A DNA stretch of 20,000 nt, from positions 1-20,000 of the forward strand of contig NW_021824011.1 of assembly GCF_006345805.1 (NCBI RefSeq). The letters are read 5' to 3'. A program made the translations under genes and the position numbers. This document shows positions 2,660 through 19,882 of this stretch, in pieces (positions within the stretch are counted from its first letter, which is position 1; each line of letters starts with the position of its first letter). The stretch comes from Octopus sinensis. Its lineage: Eukaryota. The notes beneath the pieces are model-generated. The model made no database searches, was not told the origin of the DNA, and was given only the letters and a program-made list of their open reading frames with translations.

Positions 2660-3060
2660 CCTCTTTTACTGGTTGCAGTCATTTGACTGTGGCCATGCTG
2701 GAGCACCGCCTTTAGTCGAGCAAATCGACCCCAGGACTTATTCTTTGTAAGCCTAGTACTTATTCTATCGGTCACTTTTGCCGAACCGCTAAGTTACGGT
2801 GACGTAAACACACCAGCATCGGTTGTCAAGCGATGTTGAGGGGAAAAACACTGACACACAAACATATACACACACATATATTTATATACATATATATGAA
2901 GGGCTTCTTTCAGTTTCCGTCTACCAAATCCACTCACAAGGCTTTGGTCGGCCCCGAGGCTATAGTAGAAGACACTTGTCCGAGGTGCCACGCAGTGGGA
3001 CTGAACCGGGAACCATGTGGTTGGTAAGAAAGCTACTTACCACACAGCCACTCCTGTGCC
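2660..3060 (-). mobile_element. Full-length tRNA-derived SINE, family B (CORE-like, bipartite with internal CA/TA spacer)
   Basis: Minus-strand head ggcacaggagtggctgtgtggtaag (A-box-like), ggttcagtccc (B-box-like), then gcacctcggacaagtgtcttctact (CORE-like). Colinear along its whole length with the copy at 19395-19882. Confidence 0.9.
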
Positions 3061-4921: not shown

Positions 4922-5081
4922 ATAGGCATGGCTGCGTGGTAAGTACCTTGCTTACCAACCATATGGTTTCGGGTAGAGTCCCACTGCGTAGCATCTTGGG
5001 CAAATGTCTTCTACTAAAGCCTTGGGTTGACCAAAGACTTGTGAATGAATTTGGGAGACGGAAACTGAAAGAAGCCTGTTG

Positions 5082-5085
<4 letters not shown>
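4922..5085 (+). mobile_element. SINE family B, 5' half only
   Basis: ggcatggctgcgtggtaagtaccttgcttaccaacc...gtcccactgcgtagcatcttgggcaaatgtcttctact...gacggaaactgaaagaagcc is colinear with the reverse complement of 2897-3060 and ends in the internal TA/TG spacer. Confidence 0.9.
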
Positions 5086-5120
<35 letters not shown>

Positions 5121-5804
5121 ATGTGTGTGTTTACGACTCCGTAATTTACCTGATAAGCAAAATAGAACGATGAAATTAGCATATTGAGCCTAGAAAGAGA
5201 AACAGAAGACAGGGATATAATGCCAATCAAACGCTTATTCAAAGCAAGGAAGAACTGAAACAGTAGTTGACAACGGTAAAATACTTCACATTGTATAATT
5301 AACATGACAAATGTTGTGGTACGTACCAGTTTCTATCAATACAAAGGCAGAAAACAAATATATATAAATGCAAAGGTGACCTGTAAGGGCAGAAAGCTCA
5401 AATTCTATATTATGTTCACATCGTGCAGTAATATGTATTGGTCAGAATGGAAACACTAATTATCAGTACGCATGCGAATACACCGGCAACATTTCAGGCA
5501 TACGCTACTCAGGCTGATCTTCCTGTGTTTCTATATAAATTAAGACAATGTCATTGTGTTAAATGAATTTCTACTTCTGAACGAAGAGGTATGTTGGATT
5601 TTCTTGTTTTGAAGGGATTTTCGGTTAACAGTATATATACCATTAGCTATTCTTATAATCAAGTTTATATAACAAAACATTTTATAAAAGTTTTCTATTG
5701 AGACGATGGATTTCATACGTTTCGACATTTATGCTTAAGTTGTAGCGGTCTTCTGATATTACTTACAGTAGAAGATTCAGGAGACCATATTATCTAATCA
5801 CACA

Positions 5805-7059: not shown

Positions 7060-7103
7060 CTGCAGCAACAACAACAACAACTACAATAACAACAACGGCG
7101 GGC

Positions 7104-7137
<34 letters not shown>

Positions 7138-8125
7138 GCAGCAACGAAAACCACTGCAACTGTGACATCAACGGGTACAACAACAACAACATCATATGTA
7201 TTAGTAAGAACGCACACGTTTGACGACAATAACAACAACAACAACGACTTTGTTGATGACAACAGCAAAAAGAACGACATTGGCAGGAAGAAGAAAAAGA
7301 AGGAGCATCATAAGGAGGAGGAAGAGCAAGAGGAGTTGGAAGAGCAGGAATAGTAAGAGAAGGAGAAGGAGGAGGGGAGCAGGAGAAGGAATGATAATAA
7401 TAACGATAATAATAATGATAATAATAATAAAAAGGAGCAGGAGGATGAGGAAGAGCAAGAGGAGGTGGAAGAAAAGGAGGAGTAGGAGAAGGGGGAGAAG
7501 AAGGAAGAGGAGGAGGAGGCGTACGTGGAGGAAGAGGAGGCGTAAGTGGAGGAAGAGGAGCAGGGAAAGAAATTAGCGATGAAGAAGAAAGAGAATAATA
7601 AGAAGCAGGGGAGGAAGAAGAGCAAGAGGAGCAAGAGGAGGAGAAGAAGGAGGAAATAGCGAAGAAGAAGAAGAAGAAATGAAAGTTATGAAGAACATGA
7701 AAAAGATGAAAGTGATGAAGTACATGAAGACGATAAAAGTGGAGATATTGAAGAAGACCAAGAAGATGAAAGAAGTACGAGGAGTAGGTGCAGGAGGTGG
7801 CAAAGAAGAAGAAAAGGAAGAAGAAGAAGAAGAAGAAGAAGAAGAAGAAGAAGAAGAAGAAGAAGAGAAGAAGAAGAAGAAGAAAAGAAGAAGAAAAGGA
7901 GAAGGGGAATAAGAAAAGAAGAAATCAACAGTAACCACTATAAACGACAACAAGAGCAGCAGCGGCGGCAGAAATAAGAGCATAAATGTGACAACAACAA
8001 GATCTGCAACAATAATAATAATGACAGCATCATAATGATAAACCAATGCAGCAGCAGCAGCTACATCGATAGTAATAATGATGATAATGATGATGATGAT
8101 GGTGATGATGATGATGACAACAACA

Positions 8126-8162
<37 letters not shown>

Positions 8163-8246
8163 CAACAACACAACAACAATGATAATAATAATAATAATAA
8201 TAATAATAACATTCAATCGAAAAGTGATGATGATAATAATAATAAC

Positions 8247-8305
<59 letters not shown>

Positions 8306-8314
8306 TAATAATGG

Positions 8315-8345
<31 letters not shown>

Positions 8346-8404
8346 AGCAGCATCATAATGACAAAAGTATTAACAGCAAGAACGGCATCACAGACAACCA
8401 CAGC

Positions 8405-8442
<38 letters not shown>

Positions 8443-8580
8443 AAACAGCAAGTTCGAAACTAAAAGAAACGAAAGCAACAATAATAAAAAAAAAAGATAA
8501 AATAAACCACAGCAAACAACAAAGGTAAATATGACAACAACAAAAGCAACAAAGCAACAAAGGCCATAACAAAGAACAAA

Positions 8581-8611
<31 letters not shown>

Positions 8612-8632
8612 ACAGCAACAACAATAACAAAT
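7060..8632. repeat. Long trinucleotide low-complexity tract: (CAA)n, (GAA)n/(GAG)n, (TAA)n, (GAT)n
   Basis: Strongly purine/A-rich on the plus strand. The ORFs here are homopolymeric (poly-E/K/R/I/M) and open in several frames at once, as expected for SSRs. Confidence 0.93.
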
Positions 8633-8710
8633 GAAATTTAATAGTCTATGTTATTTAAATTATATTGATGTAATATTGTTTAATAAACATATTGGAATTA
8701 GTGTTGGGGC

Positions 8711-8870
8711 TGTTGTTGTTGTTGTTGTAGACAATGACTTTGATATCGATGTTGTTATTGTTGTTGCTGCCGTCGTTATAGTGTTGTTGTTGTTGTTGTT
8801 GTTGTTGTAGACAATGACTTTGATATCGATGTTGTTATTGTTGTTGCTGCCGTCGTTATAGTGTTGTTGT
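8711..8870. repeat. Two-copy tandem duplication, 80-bp period
   Basis: tagacaatgactttgatatcgatgttgttattgttgttgctgccgtcgttatagtgttg occurs identically from 8728 and from 8808, embedded in (TTG)n. Confidence 0.95.
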
Positions 8871-9168
8871 TGTTGTTGTTGTTGTTATTGTTGTTGTTGT
8901 TGATGTGGTTAATCTTTGTTTCTTTGTTTTCTTAATTTTGCAAACGTTGCATCTTTCGCATCTTTAATCAACGTAATTGTCATCGCCGTCGCCATAGTTA
9001 TCATCAGCATCATCCTCATGATCGTCCTTGTCCTCACAATTATCATTAGCAGCAGCAGCAGCAGCAGTGGCACGTGCACCGCCACAAAAAACCCACCGCC
9101 GCCTCCACCATCATCATCGTACTCCTCGTCAACTCATCACCTCGACAGGTGACGGACAATACCACGAT

Positions 9169-9266
9169 CACCGCCACCGCCACCGCCACCGCCACCGCCA
9201 CCGCCACCGCCACCGCCACCGCCACCGCCACCGCCACCGCCACCGCCACCGCCACCGCCACCGCCA
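9169..9266. repeat. (CCACCG)n hexanucleotide repeat, about 16 units
   Basis: Perfect run, directly visible. Confidence 0.97.
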
Positions 9267-9357
9267 ACACCAACACCACCGCCACTATCACCGTCACAGC
9301 CAGTACTACAACTACTACCACAACTACCAGAACCACCATTTCCACTACCATAACGAG

Positions 9358-9437
<80 letters not shown>
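9358..9437. repeat. (CAT)n microsatellite, about 26 units
   Basis: Perfect run, directly visible. Confidence 0.97.
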
Positions 9438-9598
9438 CGATCTACTCTAGGCACATGCAACAGCTTGAAGTCTGTTAAAATTCTAACCGAAAACGAGATT
9501 GAATTAGTTTTTTAACAAAAGAGCAAAGTAATTCAAATCTCTCACCTAATTCAAAGGGCTCGGACACACAGCATACATGAATTAGCGCATGTACACAC

Positions 9599-9824: not shown

Positions 9825-9826
<2 letters not shown>
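9655..9826 (+). mobile_element. Short interspersed element fragment carrying a degenerate minimal (Penelope-type) hammerhead-like motif at 9701-9736
   Basis: Bounded by CA/TA microsatellites on both sides. Contains cttt-CTGTTGA-a-GAGC-ttag-GCTC-GAAA-tgtg-aaag, with a helix II hairpin, GAAA and helix I cttt/aaag. Deviates from the hammerhead consensus at A6 and at the cleavage site. Confidence 0.5.
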
Positions 9827-9871
<45 letters not shown>

Positions 9872-9994
9872 TTAGCGCACCAGAACTAAGACATTTGAAA
9901 TTATCCCTAATGTAATCGGTAAAACTAAACACGTGTCTGTTTTGGCACAGAAAGCTGGGGTTAGTTTTTTCAAATTACATTACCTGTTCGGAAC

Positions 9995-10074
9995 GATCGC
10001 ACTGACGAAACTGCGGATAATTGGATTAATTAAGTAATTTTTTTGTTAATAGTTGAAACCGCCGGTATGTGATT
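9995..10074 (+). ncRNA. Type I hammerhead ribozyme, copy 1 (predicted cleavage after GUA at 10067)
   Basis: Helix I GATCGCA (9995-10001) / TGTGATT (10068-10074), 7 bp including 2 G.U. Core CTGACGA (10002-10008). Helix II AACT (10009-10012) / AGTT (10051-10054). GAAA (10055-10058). Helix III A-CC-gcc-GG-T. Cleavage triplet GUA. All invariant core positions are present; activity is untested. Confidence 0.85.
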
Positions 10075-10542
10075 AATTCTGTTTGTTTTTATATAATTTT
10101 CATCTGTCTTGCCCGCCTAATTGTTCTGGTGTCCGCTGAATTTCCCTCTAGAAAACAGTCTTTGTAGTTTGATCGTTGTTGATCTATTTCTAGCATACGG
10201 CCGACTACCTAGCGGTCTTGCCCTTTGAATATACACATTATTAGAATTTTCTCTGATTTCTTAGATTTTTGTATGCTAGGCTATTGGTTTTAAATTGTTG
10301 TTAATTAAATTAATATTAATTTGTCTCCCTCATTATTTAAATATTAGAATAAATATGTTCTCTAATAGGCAGCACTAACCGCAGTAAATTATTTACGGCA
10401 GTTCTTCGCTTCCGGAATTTTTAGCGCGCCAGAACTAAGACATTTGAAATTATCCCTAATGTAATCGGTAAAACTAAACACGTGTCTGTTTTGACACAGA
10501 AAGCTGGGGTTAGTTTTGCAAATTACATTACCTGTTCGGAAC

Positions 10543-10622
10543 GATCGCACTGACGAAACTGCGGACAATTGGATTATATAAGTAATTCTTTTGTTAATAG
10601 TTGAAACCGCCGGTATGTGATT
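10543..10622 (+). ncRNA. Type I hammerhead ribozyme, copy 2 (predicted cleavage after GUA at 10615)
   Basis: GATCGCA (10543-10549), CTGACGA (10550-10556), AACT (10557-10560) ... AGTT (10599-10602), GAAA (10603-10606), CCGCCGGTA, TGTGATT (10616-10622). Core and helices are identical to copy 1; differences fall only within the helix II insert. Confidence 0.85.
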
Positions 10623-10842
10623 AATTCTGTTTGTTTTTATATAATTTTCATCTGTCTTGCCCGCCTAATTGTTCTGGCGTCCGCTGAATTTCCCTCTAGA
10701 AAACATCTATTTCTAGCATACGGCCGACTACCTAGTGGTCTTGCCCTTTGAATATATACATATACATACATCATACACACACACACCCACACACCACACA
10801 CACATATATATATATATCATATCTATATATATATATATATAT

Positions 10843-10964
10843 ACCAGAGTAAGTACATAAATGTGAAACAAGATGGAAAGAATAGTATTCGAATGCCAGT
10901 TGTAGAGTAATATGCTTATTAAAATGCAGTAAAAATATCACAAAAAATCTGTTACTCAGAATTT
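10843..10964 (-). mobile_element. Truncated interspersed repeat fragment, possibly ending in the 3' half of another hammerhead
   Basis: Unique-looking ~120 bp between TA runs. The minus strand at 10964-10949 reads AAA-TTCTGAG-TA-acag. I recall a similar octopus repeat, but this is unverified. Confidence 0.3.
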
Positions 10965-13902: not shown

Positions 13903-14718
13903 TAATCCCCGTCAACCACCAACGCAGTCACCACCACCACCATCACCACCACCACCACCACCACTACCACCACCACCACCACCACCACCACCACAACCAC
14001 CGTCACCACCACAACCACCGTCACCACCATCACCACCACAACCACCACCACCGTCACCACCACCACCACCACTACCACCACCACCACCACCACCACCACC
14101 ACAACCACCGTCACCACCACAACCACCGTCACCACCACCACCACCACCACTACCACCACCACCACCACCACCACCACAACCACCGTCACCACCACAACCA
14201 CCGTCACCACCATCACCACCACAACCACCACCACCGTCACCACCACAACCACCACCACCACCACCACCACCACCACCACACCACCACCACAACCACCGTC
14301 ACCACCACAACCACCGTCACCACACCACCACCACCACCACCACCACCGTCACCACCACCACCACCACTACCAACACCACCACCACCAACCACCACCACAA
14401 CCACCGTCACCACCACAACCACGTCACCACCATCACCACACCACCAACCACCACCACCGTCACCACCACAATCACCACCACCACCACCACCGTCACCACC
14501 ACAATCACCACCACCATCACCACCACAACCACCACCACCGTCACCACTACCACCACACCACCACCACCACCACCACCACCACCACCACCACCACCACCAC
14601 CACCACAACCACCGTCACCACCACAACCACCGTCACCACCATCACCACCACAACCACCACCACCGTCACCACCACCACCACCACCACCGTCACCACCACA
14701 ACCTCCACCATCATCATC
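13903..14718 (+). repeat. CCA-rich minisatellite containing the 18-mer caaccaccgtcaccacca, with higher-order block duplications
   Basis: Repeated caccacaaccaccgtcaccaccacaaccaccgtcaccaccatcacc blocks near 13990, 14170 and 14600. Confidence 0.92.
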
Positions 14719-14777
14719 GTCTCTGTAGGACTGATAGTGAAGAAGCTATATTCAGTGGCGCTGTTTGTAGAGGCTTT

Positions 14778-16113
14778 GGTTGTAGCGGTGGTGGTGGTAG
14801 TGGTGATGGCTGCAGTGGCGATGGTGACAATGGTGGCAATGGTGGCGATGGTGGTTGTGGTGGCGATGGTGGTTGTGGTGGCGATGGTGGTTGTGGTGGC
14901 GATGGTGGTTGTGGTGGCGATGGTGGTTGTGGTGGCGATGGTGGTTGTGGTGGCGATGGTGGTTGTGGTGGCGATGGTGGTTGTGGTGGCGATGGTGGTT
15001 GTGGTGGCGATGGTGGTTGTGGTGGCGATGGTGGTTGTGGTGGCGATGGTGGTTGTGGTGGCGATGGTGGTTGTGGTGGCGATGGTGGTTGTGGTGGCGA
15101 TGGTGGTTGTGTTGGTGGCAATGGTGGTTGTGGGCAATGGTGGTTGTGGTGGCGGATGGGTGTTGTGGTGGCGATGGTGGTTGTGGTGGCGATGGTGGTT
15201 GTGGTGGCGATGGTGGTTGTTGTGGCAATGGTGGTGTGGTGGCAATGGTGGTTGTGGTGGCGATGGTGGTTGTGGGGGCGATGGTGGTTGTGGTGGCGAT
15301 GGTGGTTGTGTGGGGGTGGTGGGGTGGCGATGGTGGTTGTGGTGGCGATGGTGGTTGTGGTGGCGATGGTGGTGGTGGTGGCGATTGGTGTTGTGGTGGC
15401 GATGGTGGTTGTGTGGCGATGGTGGTTGTGGTGGAGATGGTGGTTTGGGTGGCGATGGTGTTGTGGTGGCGATGGTGGTCGATTGGTGGTTGTGGTGGCG
15501 ATGGTGGTGGTGGTGGCGATGGTGGTTGTTGGTGGCAATGGTGGTTGTGGTGGCGATGGTTGGTGTGTGGTGGCAAGTGGTTGTGGTGGCAATGGTGGTT
15601 GTGGTGGCGATGGTGGTTGTGGTGGCGATGGTGGTTGTGGTGGCGATGGTGGTTGTGTGGCGATGGTGGTTGTGGTGGTGATGGCGGCGGCGTGGTGGTT
15701 GTGGTGGCAATAGTGGTTGTGGTGGCGATGGGGTTGGCGGCGGCGGTGTGGTTGTGGTGGCGATGGTGGTTGTGGTGGTGATGGCGGCGGCGGTGGTGGT
15801 TGTGGTGGCGATGGTGGTTGTGGTGGCAATGGTGGTTGTGGTGGCGATGGTGGTTGTGGTGGCGATGGTGGTTGTGGTGGCGATGGTGGTTGTGGTGGCG
15901 ATGGTGGTTGTGGTGGCGATGGTGGTTGTGGTGGCGATGGTGGTTGTGGTGGCAATGGTGGTTGTGGTGGTGATGGCGTCGGCGACGGTGGTGGGGATGG
16001 CGGCGGCGGTGGTGGTTGTGGTGGCGATGGTGGTTGTGGTGGCAATGGTGGTTGTGGTGGTGATGGCGTCGGCGACGGTGGTGGGGATGGCGGCGGCGGT
16101 GGTGGTTGTGGTG
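14778..16113 (-). repeat. TGG-rich 18-bp minisatellite (ggcgatggtggttgtggt)n; indel-rich centre and a 90-bp higher-order duplication at the right end
   Basis: Perfect 18-bp periodicity at ~14830-15110 and ~15800-15960. tgatggcgtcggcgacgg recurs at 15971 and 16061. Confidence 0.95.
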
Positions 16114-19221: not shown

Positions 19222-19337
19222 GGCGCAGTAATGGCTGTGTAGTAAGTAGCTTGCTTACTAAGTATGTAGTTCCGGGTTCAGTCCCACTGCCTGGCACCTT
19301 GGGCAAGTTTCTTCTACTGTAGCCTCGGACCAACCAG
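19222..19337 (+). mobile_element. SINE family B head, 3'-truncated
   Basis: ggcgcagtaatggctgtgtagtaagtagcttgcttact...gggttcagtcccactgcctggcaccttgggcaagtttcttctactgtagcctcgg. Confidence 0.9.
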
Positions 19338-19394: not shown

Positions 19395-19882
19395 TTTTTA
19401 TTCTTTTATTCTTTTACTTGTTTCAGTCATTTGATTGCGGCCATGCTGGAACACCGCCTTTAGTCGAGCAAATCGACCCCAGGACTTATTCTTTGTAAGC
19501 CTAGTACATATTTTATCAGTCACTTTAGCTTAACCGCTAGGTGACGGGGACGTAAACACACCAGCATCGGTTTTCAAGCGATGTTGGGGGGACTAACATG
19601 GACGCACAAACATACACACACACACGCACAAACATACACACACACACGCACACACACAAGTATATACACACACACACACACAACTCACACATACACACAC
19701 ACACACATATATATATATACGATGGACTTCTTTCAGTTTTTGTCTACCAACTCCGCTCACAAGGCCCTGGTCGGCCCGAAGGTACAGTAGAAGAGACTTG
19801 CCCAAGATTCCAGGCAGTGGGACTGAATCCGGAACCACATGCTTAGTAAGCAAGCTACTTACTACACAGCCGTTACTGCGCC
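19395..19882 (-). mobile_element. Full-length SINE family B with expanded internal (CA)n spacer
   Basis: Colinear with 2660-3060, from the tail (tcttttacttgtttcagtcatttga) to the head (cagccgttactgcgcc). Confidence 0.92.

What the first reader, a model, noticed from the sequence alone, without database searches (positions are those of the whole stretch)
9871..10757. Putative retrozyme: ORF-less direct-repeat element with two intact hammerhead ribozymes 548 nt apart
Seen: two ~97% identical direct repeats flank ~185 bp of unique sequence, with no ORF. Each repeat contains a complete type I hammerhead (helix I GAUCGCA/UGUGAUU, core CUGACGA, helix II AACU/AGUU, GAAA, helix III, GUA cleavage triplet). 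None of the ~9 substitutions or 2 indels between the repeats touches the core or these helices. Established: tandem hammerheads without coding capacity define retrozymes. Plant LTR retrozymes use type III hammerheads, while metazoan non-LTR retrozymes and Penelope-like elements use type I; their transcripts self-cleave to monomers that can circularise. Inference: a plus-strand transcript would be cut after 10067 and 10615, releasing a 548-nt monomer that could become a circRNA and be mobilised in trans, most plausibly by a Penelope-like reverse transcriptase. The monomer is longer than the few-hundred-nt animal retrozymes I know of. I cannot tell whether this family is already catalogued.
Basis: partly seen in the sequence, partly recalled or inferred. 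Interest (0 to 1): 0.92.

Follow-up and report, generated by a model that had tools for sequence, protein, structure and literature searches.

The report
Hammerhead-bearing tandem repeat, retrozyme-like
A non-coding 548-bp unit, present as 1.6 head-to-tail copies inside a TA microsatellite, carries a complete hammerhead ribozyme motif in each copy, so it is most likely an ordinary animal "retrozyme" (a parasite of Penelope-like retrotransposons); self-cleavage and copy number remain untested.

Summary
Positions 9872-10238 and 10421-10761 are direct repeats with 10 substitutions in 341 aligned nt and two indels. They are separated by 182 bp, which makes 1.6 copies of a 548-bp unit with no credible ORF. 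Each copy has a type I hammerhead motif with every invariant core base. The predicted cuts fall after 10067 and 10615.

A standard descriptor finds only these two sites. It found none in 1500 shuffles of the window or in 48 Mb of random sequence.

New supporting evidence:
- The + strand monomer folds better than shuffles (z = -3.7; window controls -2.4 to +1.5).
- One compensatory change (A-U versus G-C) lies in a long stem around the ribozyme (P about 0.04).
- Helix III is unstable alone but stable as a dimer.
- The insertion sits in (TA)n.

Evidence against:
- No Rfam hammerhead model matches, even at E <= 10.
- The 10.1-11.1 pair is A-U rather than the usual G-C.
- "Core spared by mutation" is not significant (P = 0.25).
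- I could retrieve no other copy, and the host is unidentified.

Published animal retrozyme units span 51-972 bp, so 548 nt is not unusual. Verdict: probably a new member of a known kind (non-LTR retrozyme / non-autonomous Penelope-like derivative). Activity is unproven. Interest is moderate to low.

The parts
9825..9871 (.). (TA)n microsatellite directly abutting the 5' end of the element. It is the likely insertion target.
   Evidence: TRF; sequence.
9872..10238 (+). Repeat copy 1, the duplicated part of the 548-bp unit.
   Evidence: 97% identical to 10421-10761.
9870..10141 (+). Predicted about 270-nt RNA domain. A long stem (9870-9893 with 10105-10141, continued by 9896-9904 with 10093-10102) encloses hairpin 9908-9982 and the hammerhead. 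It contains the pair 9879A-10130U, which is 10428G-10678C in copy 2.
   Evidence: Fold. Compensatory change with permutation P = 0.039.
9995..10074 (+). Hammerhead motif 1 (type I). Helix I is 9995-10001/10068-10074, extended by 9989-9993/10077-10081 beyond a C/AA internal loop. Core C3-A9 is 10002-10008. Helix II is 10009-10054. G12-A14 is 10055-10057. Helix III is 10058-10066. A17 is 10067, and the predicted cut is 10067|10068.
10157..10181 (+). 25-nt segment present in copy 1 and absent from copy 2.
10239..10420 (+). Part of the unit present only once (AT-rich, no ORF). It has no tRNA-type primer-binding site or polypurine tract next to the repeats.
10421..10761 (+). Repeat copy 2, truncated. 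The 3' boundary is uncertain within 10751-10761 because it merges with TA/CA-rich flank.
10543..10622 (+). Hammerhead motif 2, with the same core and helices as motif 1. The helix II extension has C-G where copy 1 has U-G (10566, 10588). The predicted cut is 10615|10616.
10068..10615 (+). Predicted 548-nt monomer released by two cuts. As a circle its MFE is -129.1 kcal/mol, z = -3.68, with 64% of bases paired.
   Evidence: controls.
10804..10843 (.). (TA)n microsatellite 3' of the element, after about 42 nt of CA/TACA-rich sequence (10762-10803). No target-site duplication can be read in such repeats.

Best explanation
This is a non-autonomous retroelement of the animal non-LTR retrozyme type, meaning a short ORF-less derivative that depends on Penelope-like elements (PLEs).

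**Shown.**
- A 548-bp AT-rich unit is present as 1.6 head-to-tail copies, abutting (TA)n on its 5' side, with (TA)n again about 42 nt beyond its 3' end.
- Each copy has a type I hammerhead motif with all invariant core bases.
- The + strand RNA is unusually well folded.
- One compensatory change separates the two copies.
- Helix III is stable only as a dimer.

**Inferred mechanism.**
1. Read-through transcription of the + strand gives an RNA with two hammerheads 548 nt apart.
2. Their near-palindromic helix III (ACCGCCGGU) pairs between copies to form a double hammerhead.
3. Cleavage after A10067 and A10615 frees a 548-nt RNA with 5'-OH and 2',3'-cyclic phosphate ends.
4. A host RtcB-type tRNA ligase can close that RNA into a circle.
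5. A PLE reverse transcriptase/GIY-YIG endonuclease nicks a (TA)n tract and copies the circle, or an uncleaved multimer, for more than one unit length. This leaves a partial tandem.

The ends of the insertion (9872 and about 10761) do not coincide with the cleavage sites. The template therefore spanned the cleavage junction twice.
For: **Repeat structure and lack of coding.**

**Hammerhead motif.**
- The complete core and three helices occur only at 10002-10067 and 10550-10615.
- There were 0 hits in 1500 shuffles and 0 in 48 Mb of random sequence.

**RNA structure.**
- The circular + strand monomer has z = -3.68, against -1.62 for the - strand.
- Fourteen control folds from the same window range from -2.39 to +1.48.
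- The long stem around the ribozyme keeps its pairing through A-U versus G-C between the copies, P about 0.04.
- Two helix II differences are U-G versus C-G.

**Dimer requirement.** Helix III is +0.4 kcal/mol as a hairpin and -10.2 kcal/mol as a homodimer. This matches the dimer-dependent animal hammerheads in PMC4209133 and PMC7229834.

**Fit to published element properties.**
- Low-GC tandem units with a type I hammerhead and no LTR, PBS or PPT (PMC7229834).
- Unit consensus lengths of 51-972 bp, and derivation from PLE pseudo-LTRs (bioRxiv 10.64898/2026.07.22.740005).
- PLE partial tandems and the (TA)n preference of Naiads; non-autonomous PLE derivatives that form head-to-tail insertions (PMC8557442).
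Against: - No Rfam hammerhead family matches at gathering score, or at E <= 10 on the 911-nt region.
- Pair 10.1-11.1 is A-U, whereas G-C is described as highly conserved (PMC4209133).
- Helix II is atypically long (46 nt).
- There is only one locus, with two near-identical copies, so there is no family-level covariation, no copy number and no evidence of mobility.
- No target-site duplication is readable.
- TRF with the published retrozyme pipeline's settings does not report a 1.6-copy repeat.
- No PLE coding sequence occurs in the 20-kb window.
- For one PLE tested in vitro, hammerhead cleavage was not needed for insertion and required the protein (PMC11167929). The role of cleavage in mobilisation is therefore not settled even for known elements.
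Confidence: 0.6

Rival explanations
1. This is a remnant of an autonomous Penelope-like element. The two repeats would be its pseudo-LTRs, and the 182-bp spacer would be what is left after the RT/endonuclease ORF was lost at this locus. On this reading it is a dead one-off deletion derivative, not a member of a dedicated retrozyme family.
For: - PLE pseudo-LTRs carry type I hammerheads, arise from partial tandems, and insert in microsatellites.
- Retrozymes and pseudo-LTRs are phylogenetically intermingled.
- Only one locus is available here.
Against: - No trace of RT or GIY-YIG coding sequence lies in the spacer or elsewhere in the window.
- The strand-specific structure of the whole 548-nt unit and the compensatory change point to selection on the short RNA itself.
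- The distinction from the best explanation is one of degree.
Confidence: 0.2
2. This is a local tandem duplication of ordinary non-coding DNA, by slippage or unequal exchange between microsatellites. On this reading it happens to contain a hammerhead-like string, and there is no ribozyme and no mobile element.
For: - No Rfam match.
- A non-canonical A10.1-U11.1 pair.
- A single locus embedded in an extremely repeat-rich, microsatellite-dense window.
- Sparing of the core by substitutions is not significant.
Against: - The motif is expected far less than once per 24 Mb of random sequence.
- The unit's + strand folds well outside the range of local controls.
- There is an in-phase compensatory change.
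- Helix I and helix II each have internal loops at the distance from the core where natural hammerheads make tertiary contacts.
- The element's edges abut (TA)n, as for PLE-type insertions.
Confidence: 0.1
3. This is a satellite- or SINE-like hammerhead repeat transcribed from an internal Pol III promoter, as proposed for Schistosoma Sm-alpha, and mobilised by a LINE rather than a PLE.
For: Hammerhead-bearing SINE-like repeats exist (cited in PMC4209133). Weak A-box- and B-box-like strings can be read at about 9873 and about 9985 (direct reading).
Against: - ARAGORN finds no tRNA-like structure.
- The box-like strings match poorly and are about 110 nt apart.
- There is no poly(A) or simple-repeat tail at the 3' end.
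- A more-than-unit-length partial tandem is the PLE signature, not the LINE/SINE one.
Confidence: 0.05

Closest known systems
Invertebrate non-LTR retrozymes, e.g. Mytilus galloprovincialis repeats of 350-390 bp (Cervera & de la Pena 2020, PMC7229834)
   Same: - ORF-less, low-GC head-to-tail units, each with a type I hammerhead.
- A highly self-paired predicted RNA.
- Mussel hammerheads also lack the archetypal loop 1-loop 2 nucleotides.
   Different: - The unit here is 548 bp, and only 1.6 copies are seen.
- Helix II is a 46-nt imperfect hairpin.
- The 10.1-11.1 pair is A-U.
- Expression, circles and copy number are unknown here.
Amphibian satellite 2 / axolotl retrozymes (HHR_Amex1/2; PMC7229834)
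   Same: Helix III is too weak to work alone. A palindromic helix III/loop 3 allows an active double hammerhead between neighbouring units.
   Different: The amphibian motifs have a 1-2 bp helix III with a tetraloop and conserved loop-loop contacts. Here helix III is 3 bp with a 3-nt loop, and the dimer has a central C-C mismatch.
Hammerheads in the pseudo-LTRs of Penelope-like elements (Cervera & de la Pena 2014, PMC4209133; Frangieh et al. 2024, PMC11167929)
   Same: - Type I topology.
- A larger than usual helix II.
- A dimer-oriented helix III.
- Partial-tandem genomic arrangement.
- Microsatellite targets (PMC8557442).
   Different: - PLE min-HHRs usually have a bulged base between A9 and 10.1, a G10.1-C11.1 pair and a short (4-5 bp) helix I. 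None of these holds here.
- No RT/GIY-YIG ORF is present.
Non-autonomous PLE derivatives that form pseudo-LTRs and head-to-tail insertions (e.g. MRC1/Chlamys in Chlamydomonas; PMC8557442)
   Same: A short ORF-less unit inserted as a more-than-unit-length tandem, with microsatellite insertion bias.
   Different: Those elements lack hammerheads and occur in green algae.
Plant LTR retrozymes (Cervera et al. 2016, PMC4918200)
   Same: Two direct repeats, each with a hammerhead, flank a non-coding spacer. Their circular RNAs of 600-1000 nt are close in size to this 548-nt unit.
   Different: The plant elements have type III hammerheads, a PBS and PPT, 4-bp target duplications and Gypsy dependence. 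None of these is seen here.

Membership tests
Hammerhead ribozyme, type I | Invariant core C3-U4-G5-A6-N7-G8-A9 and G12-A13-A14 | tested here: met
   CUGACGA is at 10002-10008 and 10550-10556. GAA is at 10055-10057 and 10603-10605.
Hammerhead ribozyme, type I | A15.1-U16.1 pair and a non-G base at 17 before the cleavage site | tested here: met
   A10058-U10066 and A10067 (a GUA triplet). The same holds at +548.
Hammerhead ribozyme, type I | Three helices around the core, with helix I open (5' and 3' ends leave through helix I) | tested here: met
   Helix I is 7 bp (+5 bp). Helix II is 5 bp plus an extension. Helix III is 3 bp. The HHR-constrained fold lies within 2.4-2.6 kcal/mol of the free MFE.
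Hammerhead ribozyme, type I | G10.1-C11.1 closing pair of helix II (highly conserved, but not one of the invariant catalytic bases) | tested here: not met
   The pair is A10009-U10054. Its conservation is stated in PMC4209133.
Hammerhead ribozyme, type I | Recognition by curated covariance models (Rfam hammerhead families) | tested here: not met
   No hit at gathering score on the window, and none at E <= 10 on 9860-10770.
Hammerhead ribozyme, type I | Helices supported by covariation among family members | tested here: inconclusive
   Only two 97%-identical copies are available. Helices I and III and the base of helix II are invariant. Two one-sided U-G/C-G changes fall in the helix II extension. 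No other copies could be retrieved.
Hammerhead ribozyme, type I | Mg2+-dependent site-specific self-cleavage | not testable with these tools
   This needs in vitro transcription of monomer and dimer constructs.
Non-LTR retrozyme (animal) | Head-to-tail tandem units of tens to hundreds of bp, with a type I hammerhead in consecutive units | tested here: met
   There are 1.6 units of 548 bp and two complete motifs 548 nt apart. HHR MFEs are -13.3 and -19.0 kcal/mol, below the -5 cut-off used in bioRxiv 10.64898/2026.07.22.740005.
Non-LTR retrozyme (animal) | Detected as a tandem repeat by the published pipeline (TRF, period up to 1000) | tested here: not met
   TRF with those parameters reports nothing at 9872-10761, because 1.6 copies is too few.
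Non-LTR retrozyme (animal) | No coding capacity; low GC; no LTR-type PBS or PPT | tested here: met
   The longest ORF is 59 aa, with no Pfam match or homologue. GC is 35%. No PBS- or PPT-like strings lie next to the repeats.
Non-LTR retrozyme (animal) | Multi-copy family in the host genome, co-occurring with PLEs | not testable with these tools
   No eukaryotic genome collection is on hand. There is no second copy in the window. An abundant local SINE-like repeat was also absent from genome contigs, so the negative scans there say nothing about copy number.
Non-LTR retrozyme (animal) | Expressed as linear and circular monomer RNAs | not testable with these tools
   This needs RNA-seq back-junction reads, northern blots or RNase R. 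Only the predicted fold is available (z = -3.68).
Autonomous Penelope-like element | ORF with reverse transcriptase and GIY-YIG endonuclease between pseudo-LTRs | tested here: not met
   There is no such ORF or domain in the element or anywhere in the window.
Plant LTR retrozyme | Type III hammerhead in LTRs, PBS/PPT, 4-bp target duplication | tested here: not met
   The topology is type I. No PBS or PPT is present. The flanks are microsatellite, with no readable duplication.

The most novel reading that the evidence does not exclude
The unit could represent an uncatalogued retrozyme family, possibly cephalopod, whose hammerhead is a functional structural variant. Its features would be an A10.1-U11.1 pair, a 46-nt helix II, and tertiary contacts made between internal loops of helices I and II. 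It would yield about 548-nt circular RNAs. The in-phase compensatory difference between adjacent units would mean that the array was copied from a population of RNAs evolving under structural selection, possibly with an RNA-to-RNA step, rather than from one circle.
Probability: 0.25. Interest if true: 0.5.

Novelty: new member of a known kind. Interest (0 to 1): 0.35.

Why it matters
**If confirmed.**
- It would extend non-LTR retrozymes to another animal lineage.
- It would add a hammerhead that current covariance models miss. This bears on how completely ribozymes and retrozyme-derived circular RNAs are being counted in invertebrate genomes.
- It would give one more case linking hammerhead repeats to Penelope-type insertion at (TA)n sites.

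**What it does not do.** It does not open a new class of element or mechanism. Such elements are known in cnidarians, molluscs, arthropods, fishes, amphibians and reptiles.

Tried and rejected
**Rfam.** I scanned the whole window at gathering score and the region at E <= 10. There were no hammerhead hits, only chance-level snoR9 and PCA3 matches.

**Other copies in the window.** blastn with word size 7 found none.

**Other copies elsewhere.**
- A hammerhead-specific gapped pattern found nothing in metagenome contigs, viral contigs or genome contigs.
- A 25-mer from the post-cleavage region found nothing in metagenome contigs.
- These negatives are uninformative. A pattern matching all four local copies of an abundant SINE-like repeat also found nothing in genome contigs, so that collection holds no detectable host DNA. 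The SINE control was not run on metagenome contigs or viral contigs.

**Reaching public eukaryotic assemblies through spurious ORFs.** The 59-aa ORF of the element and a SINE-derived peptide found no candidates.

**Host identification.** Searching the paper library for SINE strings gave 0 papers. The SINE-like repeats look octopus-like to me from memory only.

**Coding remnants.** Pfam on the ten most complex stop-free frames gave nothing. This rejects an autonomous PLE in the window.

**tRNA-like Pol III head.** ARAGORN found none.

**Core sparing as evidence of selection.** Rejected as not significant, P = 0.25.

**Monomer length as a novelty.** Rejected, because the published range is 51-972 bp.

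Full report
**1. The observation**

The sequence at 9872-10761 is 1.6 head-to-tail copies of a unit of 548-549 bp. Positions 9872-10238 are repeated at 10421-10761, and 10239-10420 (182 bp) occurs once.

The copies differ by 10 substitutions in 341 ungapped positions, seven of them transitions. There is also a 1-nt indel in a T run, and a 25-nt segment (10157-10181) is missing from copy 2.

There is no credible coding capacity. The longest ORF with a start codon is 59 aa, and the longest stop-free frame is 91 aa. None has a Pfam match or a homologue.

**2. The hammerhead motif**

Coordinates below are for copy 1; copy 2 is the same at +548.

| Part | Sequence | Position |
|---|---|---|
| Helix I | GAUCGCA / UGUGAUU | 9995-10001 / 10068-10074 |
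| Core C3-A9 | CUGACGA | 10002-10008 |
| Helix II | AACUG / UAGUU, closing an imperfect AU-rich hairpin | 10009-10054 |
| G12-A14 | GAA | 10055-10057 |
| Helix III | ACC / GGU around GCC | 10058-10066 |
| A17 | A | 10067 |

The order of the parts is type I.

A descriptor looser than what is observed (helix I >=5, II >=4, III >=3 bp, G-U allowed) finds exactly these two sites in the 20-kb window, on either strand. It found nothing in 1500 dinucleotide-preserving shuffles. It also found nothing in 24 Mb each of two first-order Markov models. The motif is therefore not a chance string at the scale of a window. At the scale of a multi-gigabase genome a handful of chance matches remain possible, by my analytic estimate.

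The two motifs are one duplicated observation, not two.

**3. What weakens the hammerhead call**

- Rfam's covariance models give no hammerhead hit at gathering score on the window.
- They give none at E <= 10 on the 911-nt region either.
- The pair closing helix II is A10.1-U11.1. G10.1-C11.1 is described as highly conserved in canonical and PLE hammerheads (PMC4209133).
- Helix II is 46 nt long.
With 10 substitutions and 44 of 341 positions at stake, it happens by chance 25% of the time.

**4. New evidence that the + strand RNA matters**

(a) Folded as a circle, the predicted monomer 10068-10615 has an MFE of -129.1 kcal/mol. That gives z = -3.68 against shuffles, while its reverse complement gives -1.62. 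Seven non-microsatellite 548-nt controls from the same window, folded on both strands, range from -2.39 to +1.48.

(b) In both copies the fold puts the hammerhead and a neighbouring hairpin (9908-9982) inside a long stem. That stem is 9870-9893 with 10105-10141, continued by 9896-9904 with 10093-10102. Two of the ten substitutions are the two partners of one pair in this stem. It is A9879-U10130 in copy 1 and G10428-C10678 in copy 2. A permutation test gives P = 0.039 for at least one such in-phase double change. This is one event judged post hoc, so it is suggestive only.

(c) Two of the four differences inside helix II turn U-G into C-G, and the other two lie in its terminal loop.

(d) Helix I continues after a C/AA internal loop for 5 more pairs. 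Helix II has a 2x2 internal loop after 5 pairs. These are the distances from the core at which natural hammerheads make helix I-helix II contacts. That link is inference.

(e) Helix III alone is unstable at +0.4 kcal/mol. Two copies of ACCGCCGGU pair at -10.2 kcal/mol. This is the double-hammerhead arrangement described for newt or axolotl and PLE motifs.

**5. Context**

- The element begins directly after a (TA)23 tract (9825-9871). It ends in TA/CA-rich sequence followed by another (TA)n tract at 10804-10843. No target-site duplication can be read in such sequence.
- The insertion ends (9872 and about 10761) are not the hammerhead cleavage sites. The copied template therefore ran across the cleavage junction twice. 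It was either a circle or an uncleaved multimer (inference).
- Partial tandems ("pseudo-LTRs") and a microsatellite insertion bias, (TA)n in the Naiad clade, are hallmarks of Penelope-like elements. Non-autonomous derivatives of PLEs also form head-to-tail insertions (PMC8557442).
- The window holds no RT or GIY-YIG sequence, no tRNA-like structure and no second copy of the unit.

**6. Comparison with what is known**

Animal non-LTR retrozymes are defined as low-GC, ORF-less tandem units, each with a type I hammerhead and lacking LTR, PBS and PPT. [quoted passage not shown]

A 2026 preprint reports family consensus lengths of 51-972 bp, averaging 650 bp in ray-finned fishes. It places retrozymes as sister to PLE pseudo-LTRs (bioRxiv 10.64898/2026.07.22.740005). 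A 548-nt unit is therefore within the known range.

Under that paper's operational rule the locus has two consecutive units with complete motifs, and its HHR MFEs are below -5 kcal/mol. However, its TRF step does not report a 1.6-copy repeat.

The mechanistic role of cleavage is not settled even for PLEs. In vitro, one PLE inserted uncleaved RNA, and its hammerhead cut only in the presence of the protein (PMC11167929).

**7. What could not be done**

No eukaryotic genome collection is available here.
- Pattern scans of the metagenome, viral and prokaryotic genome collections found nothing.
- A control pattern matching all four local copies of a SINE-like repeat also found nothing in genome contigs. 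That collection therefore holds no detectable host DNA, and these negatives say nothing about copy number. The control was not run on the metagenome or viral collections.
- Protein-word searches with spurious ORFs failed as well.
- The host was not identified. Literature string searches returned nothing. The SINE-like repeats look octopus-like to me from memory only. My two library searches, combining hammerhead or retrozyme terms with octopus, squid and cephalopod terms, turned up no paper that describes a retrozyme in cephalopods.

**8. Verdict**

The best explanation, at about 0.6, is a retrozyme-type non-autonomous element that depends on Penelope-like machinery and carries an atypical but core-complete type I hammerhead that probably works as a dimer.

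The rivals are:
- a one-off deletion derivative of an autonomous PLE (about 0.2);
- a chance motif in a local duplication (about 0.1);
- a SINE-like hammerhead repeat (about 0.05).

This is a new member of a known kind. Self-cleavage, circles, copy number and mobilisation are all still to be shown.

Noticed in passing
window 2846-3060 (+), 4929-5133 (-), 19665-19882 (+), 19222-19328 (-): There are four copies (78-85% identical) of an approximately 210-bp interspersed SINE-like repeat. Each follows a CA/TA microsatellite. ARAGORN sees no tRNA-like head. The repeat looks like an octopus SINE to me from memory only, and no tool confirmed the host.
   Followed up: partly
window 2662-2876 and 19410-19624: A second 215-bp repeat (90% identical) lies immediately upstream of two of the SINE-like copies. 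The two may form one composite element.
   Followed up: no
window 13929-16110: There are very long simple arrays. One is (CAC)n of about 780 bp (13929-14710). It is followed by an 18-bp minisatellite, TGGTGGCGATGGTGGTTG, of about 70 copies (14822-16066). These create spurious ORFs of 300-600 aa on both strands.
   Followed up: no
window 7066-9440: This is a block of trinucleotide and hexanucleotide arrays of changing motif: CAA, AGG/AAG, TAA, ACA, TGT, CACCGC and CAT. It includes an 80-bp tandem (8699-8886, 2.3 copies, 97% matches). No gene-like ORF is present.
   Followed up: no
window 9908-9982 and 10457-10530: An imperfect 75-nt inverted repeat (hairpin) lies just upstream of each hammerhead. 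It is tighter in copy 2, which has 10 perfect pairs, GUAAAACUAA/UUAGUUUUGC. Copy 1 has an extra U and a U-U mismatch there.
   Followed up: partly
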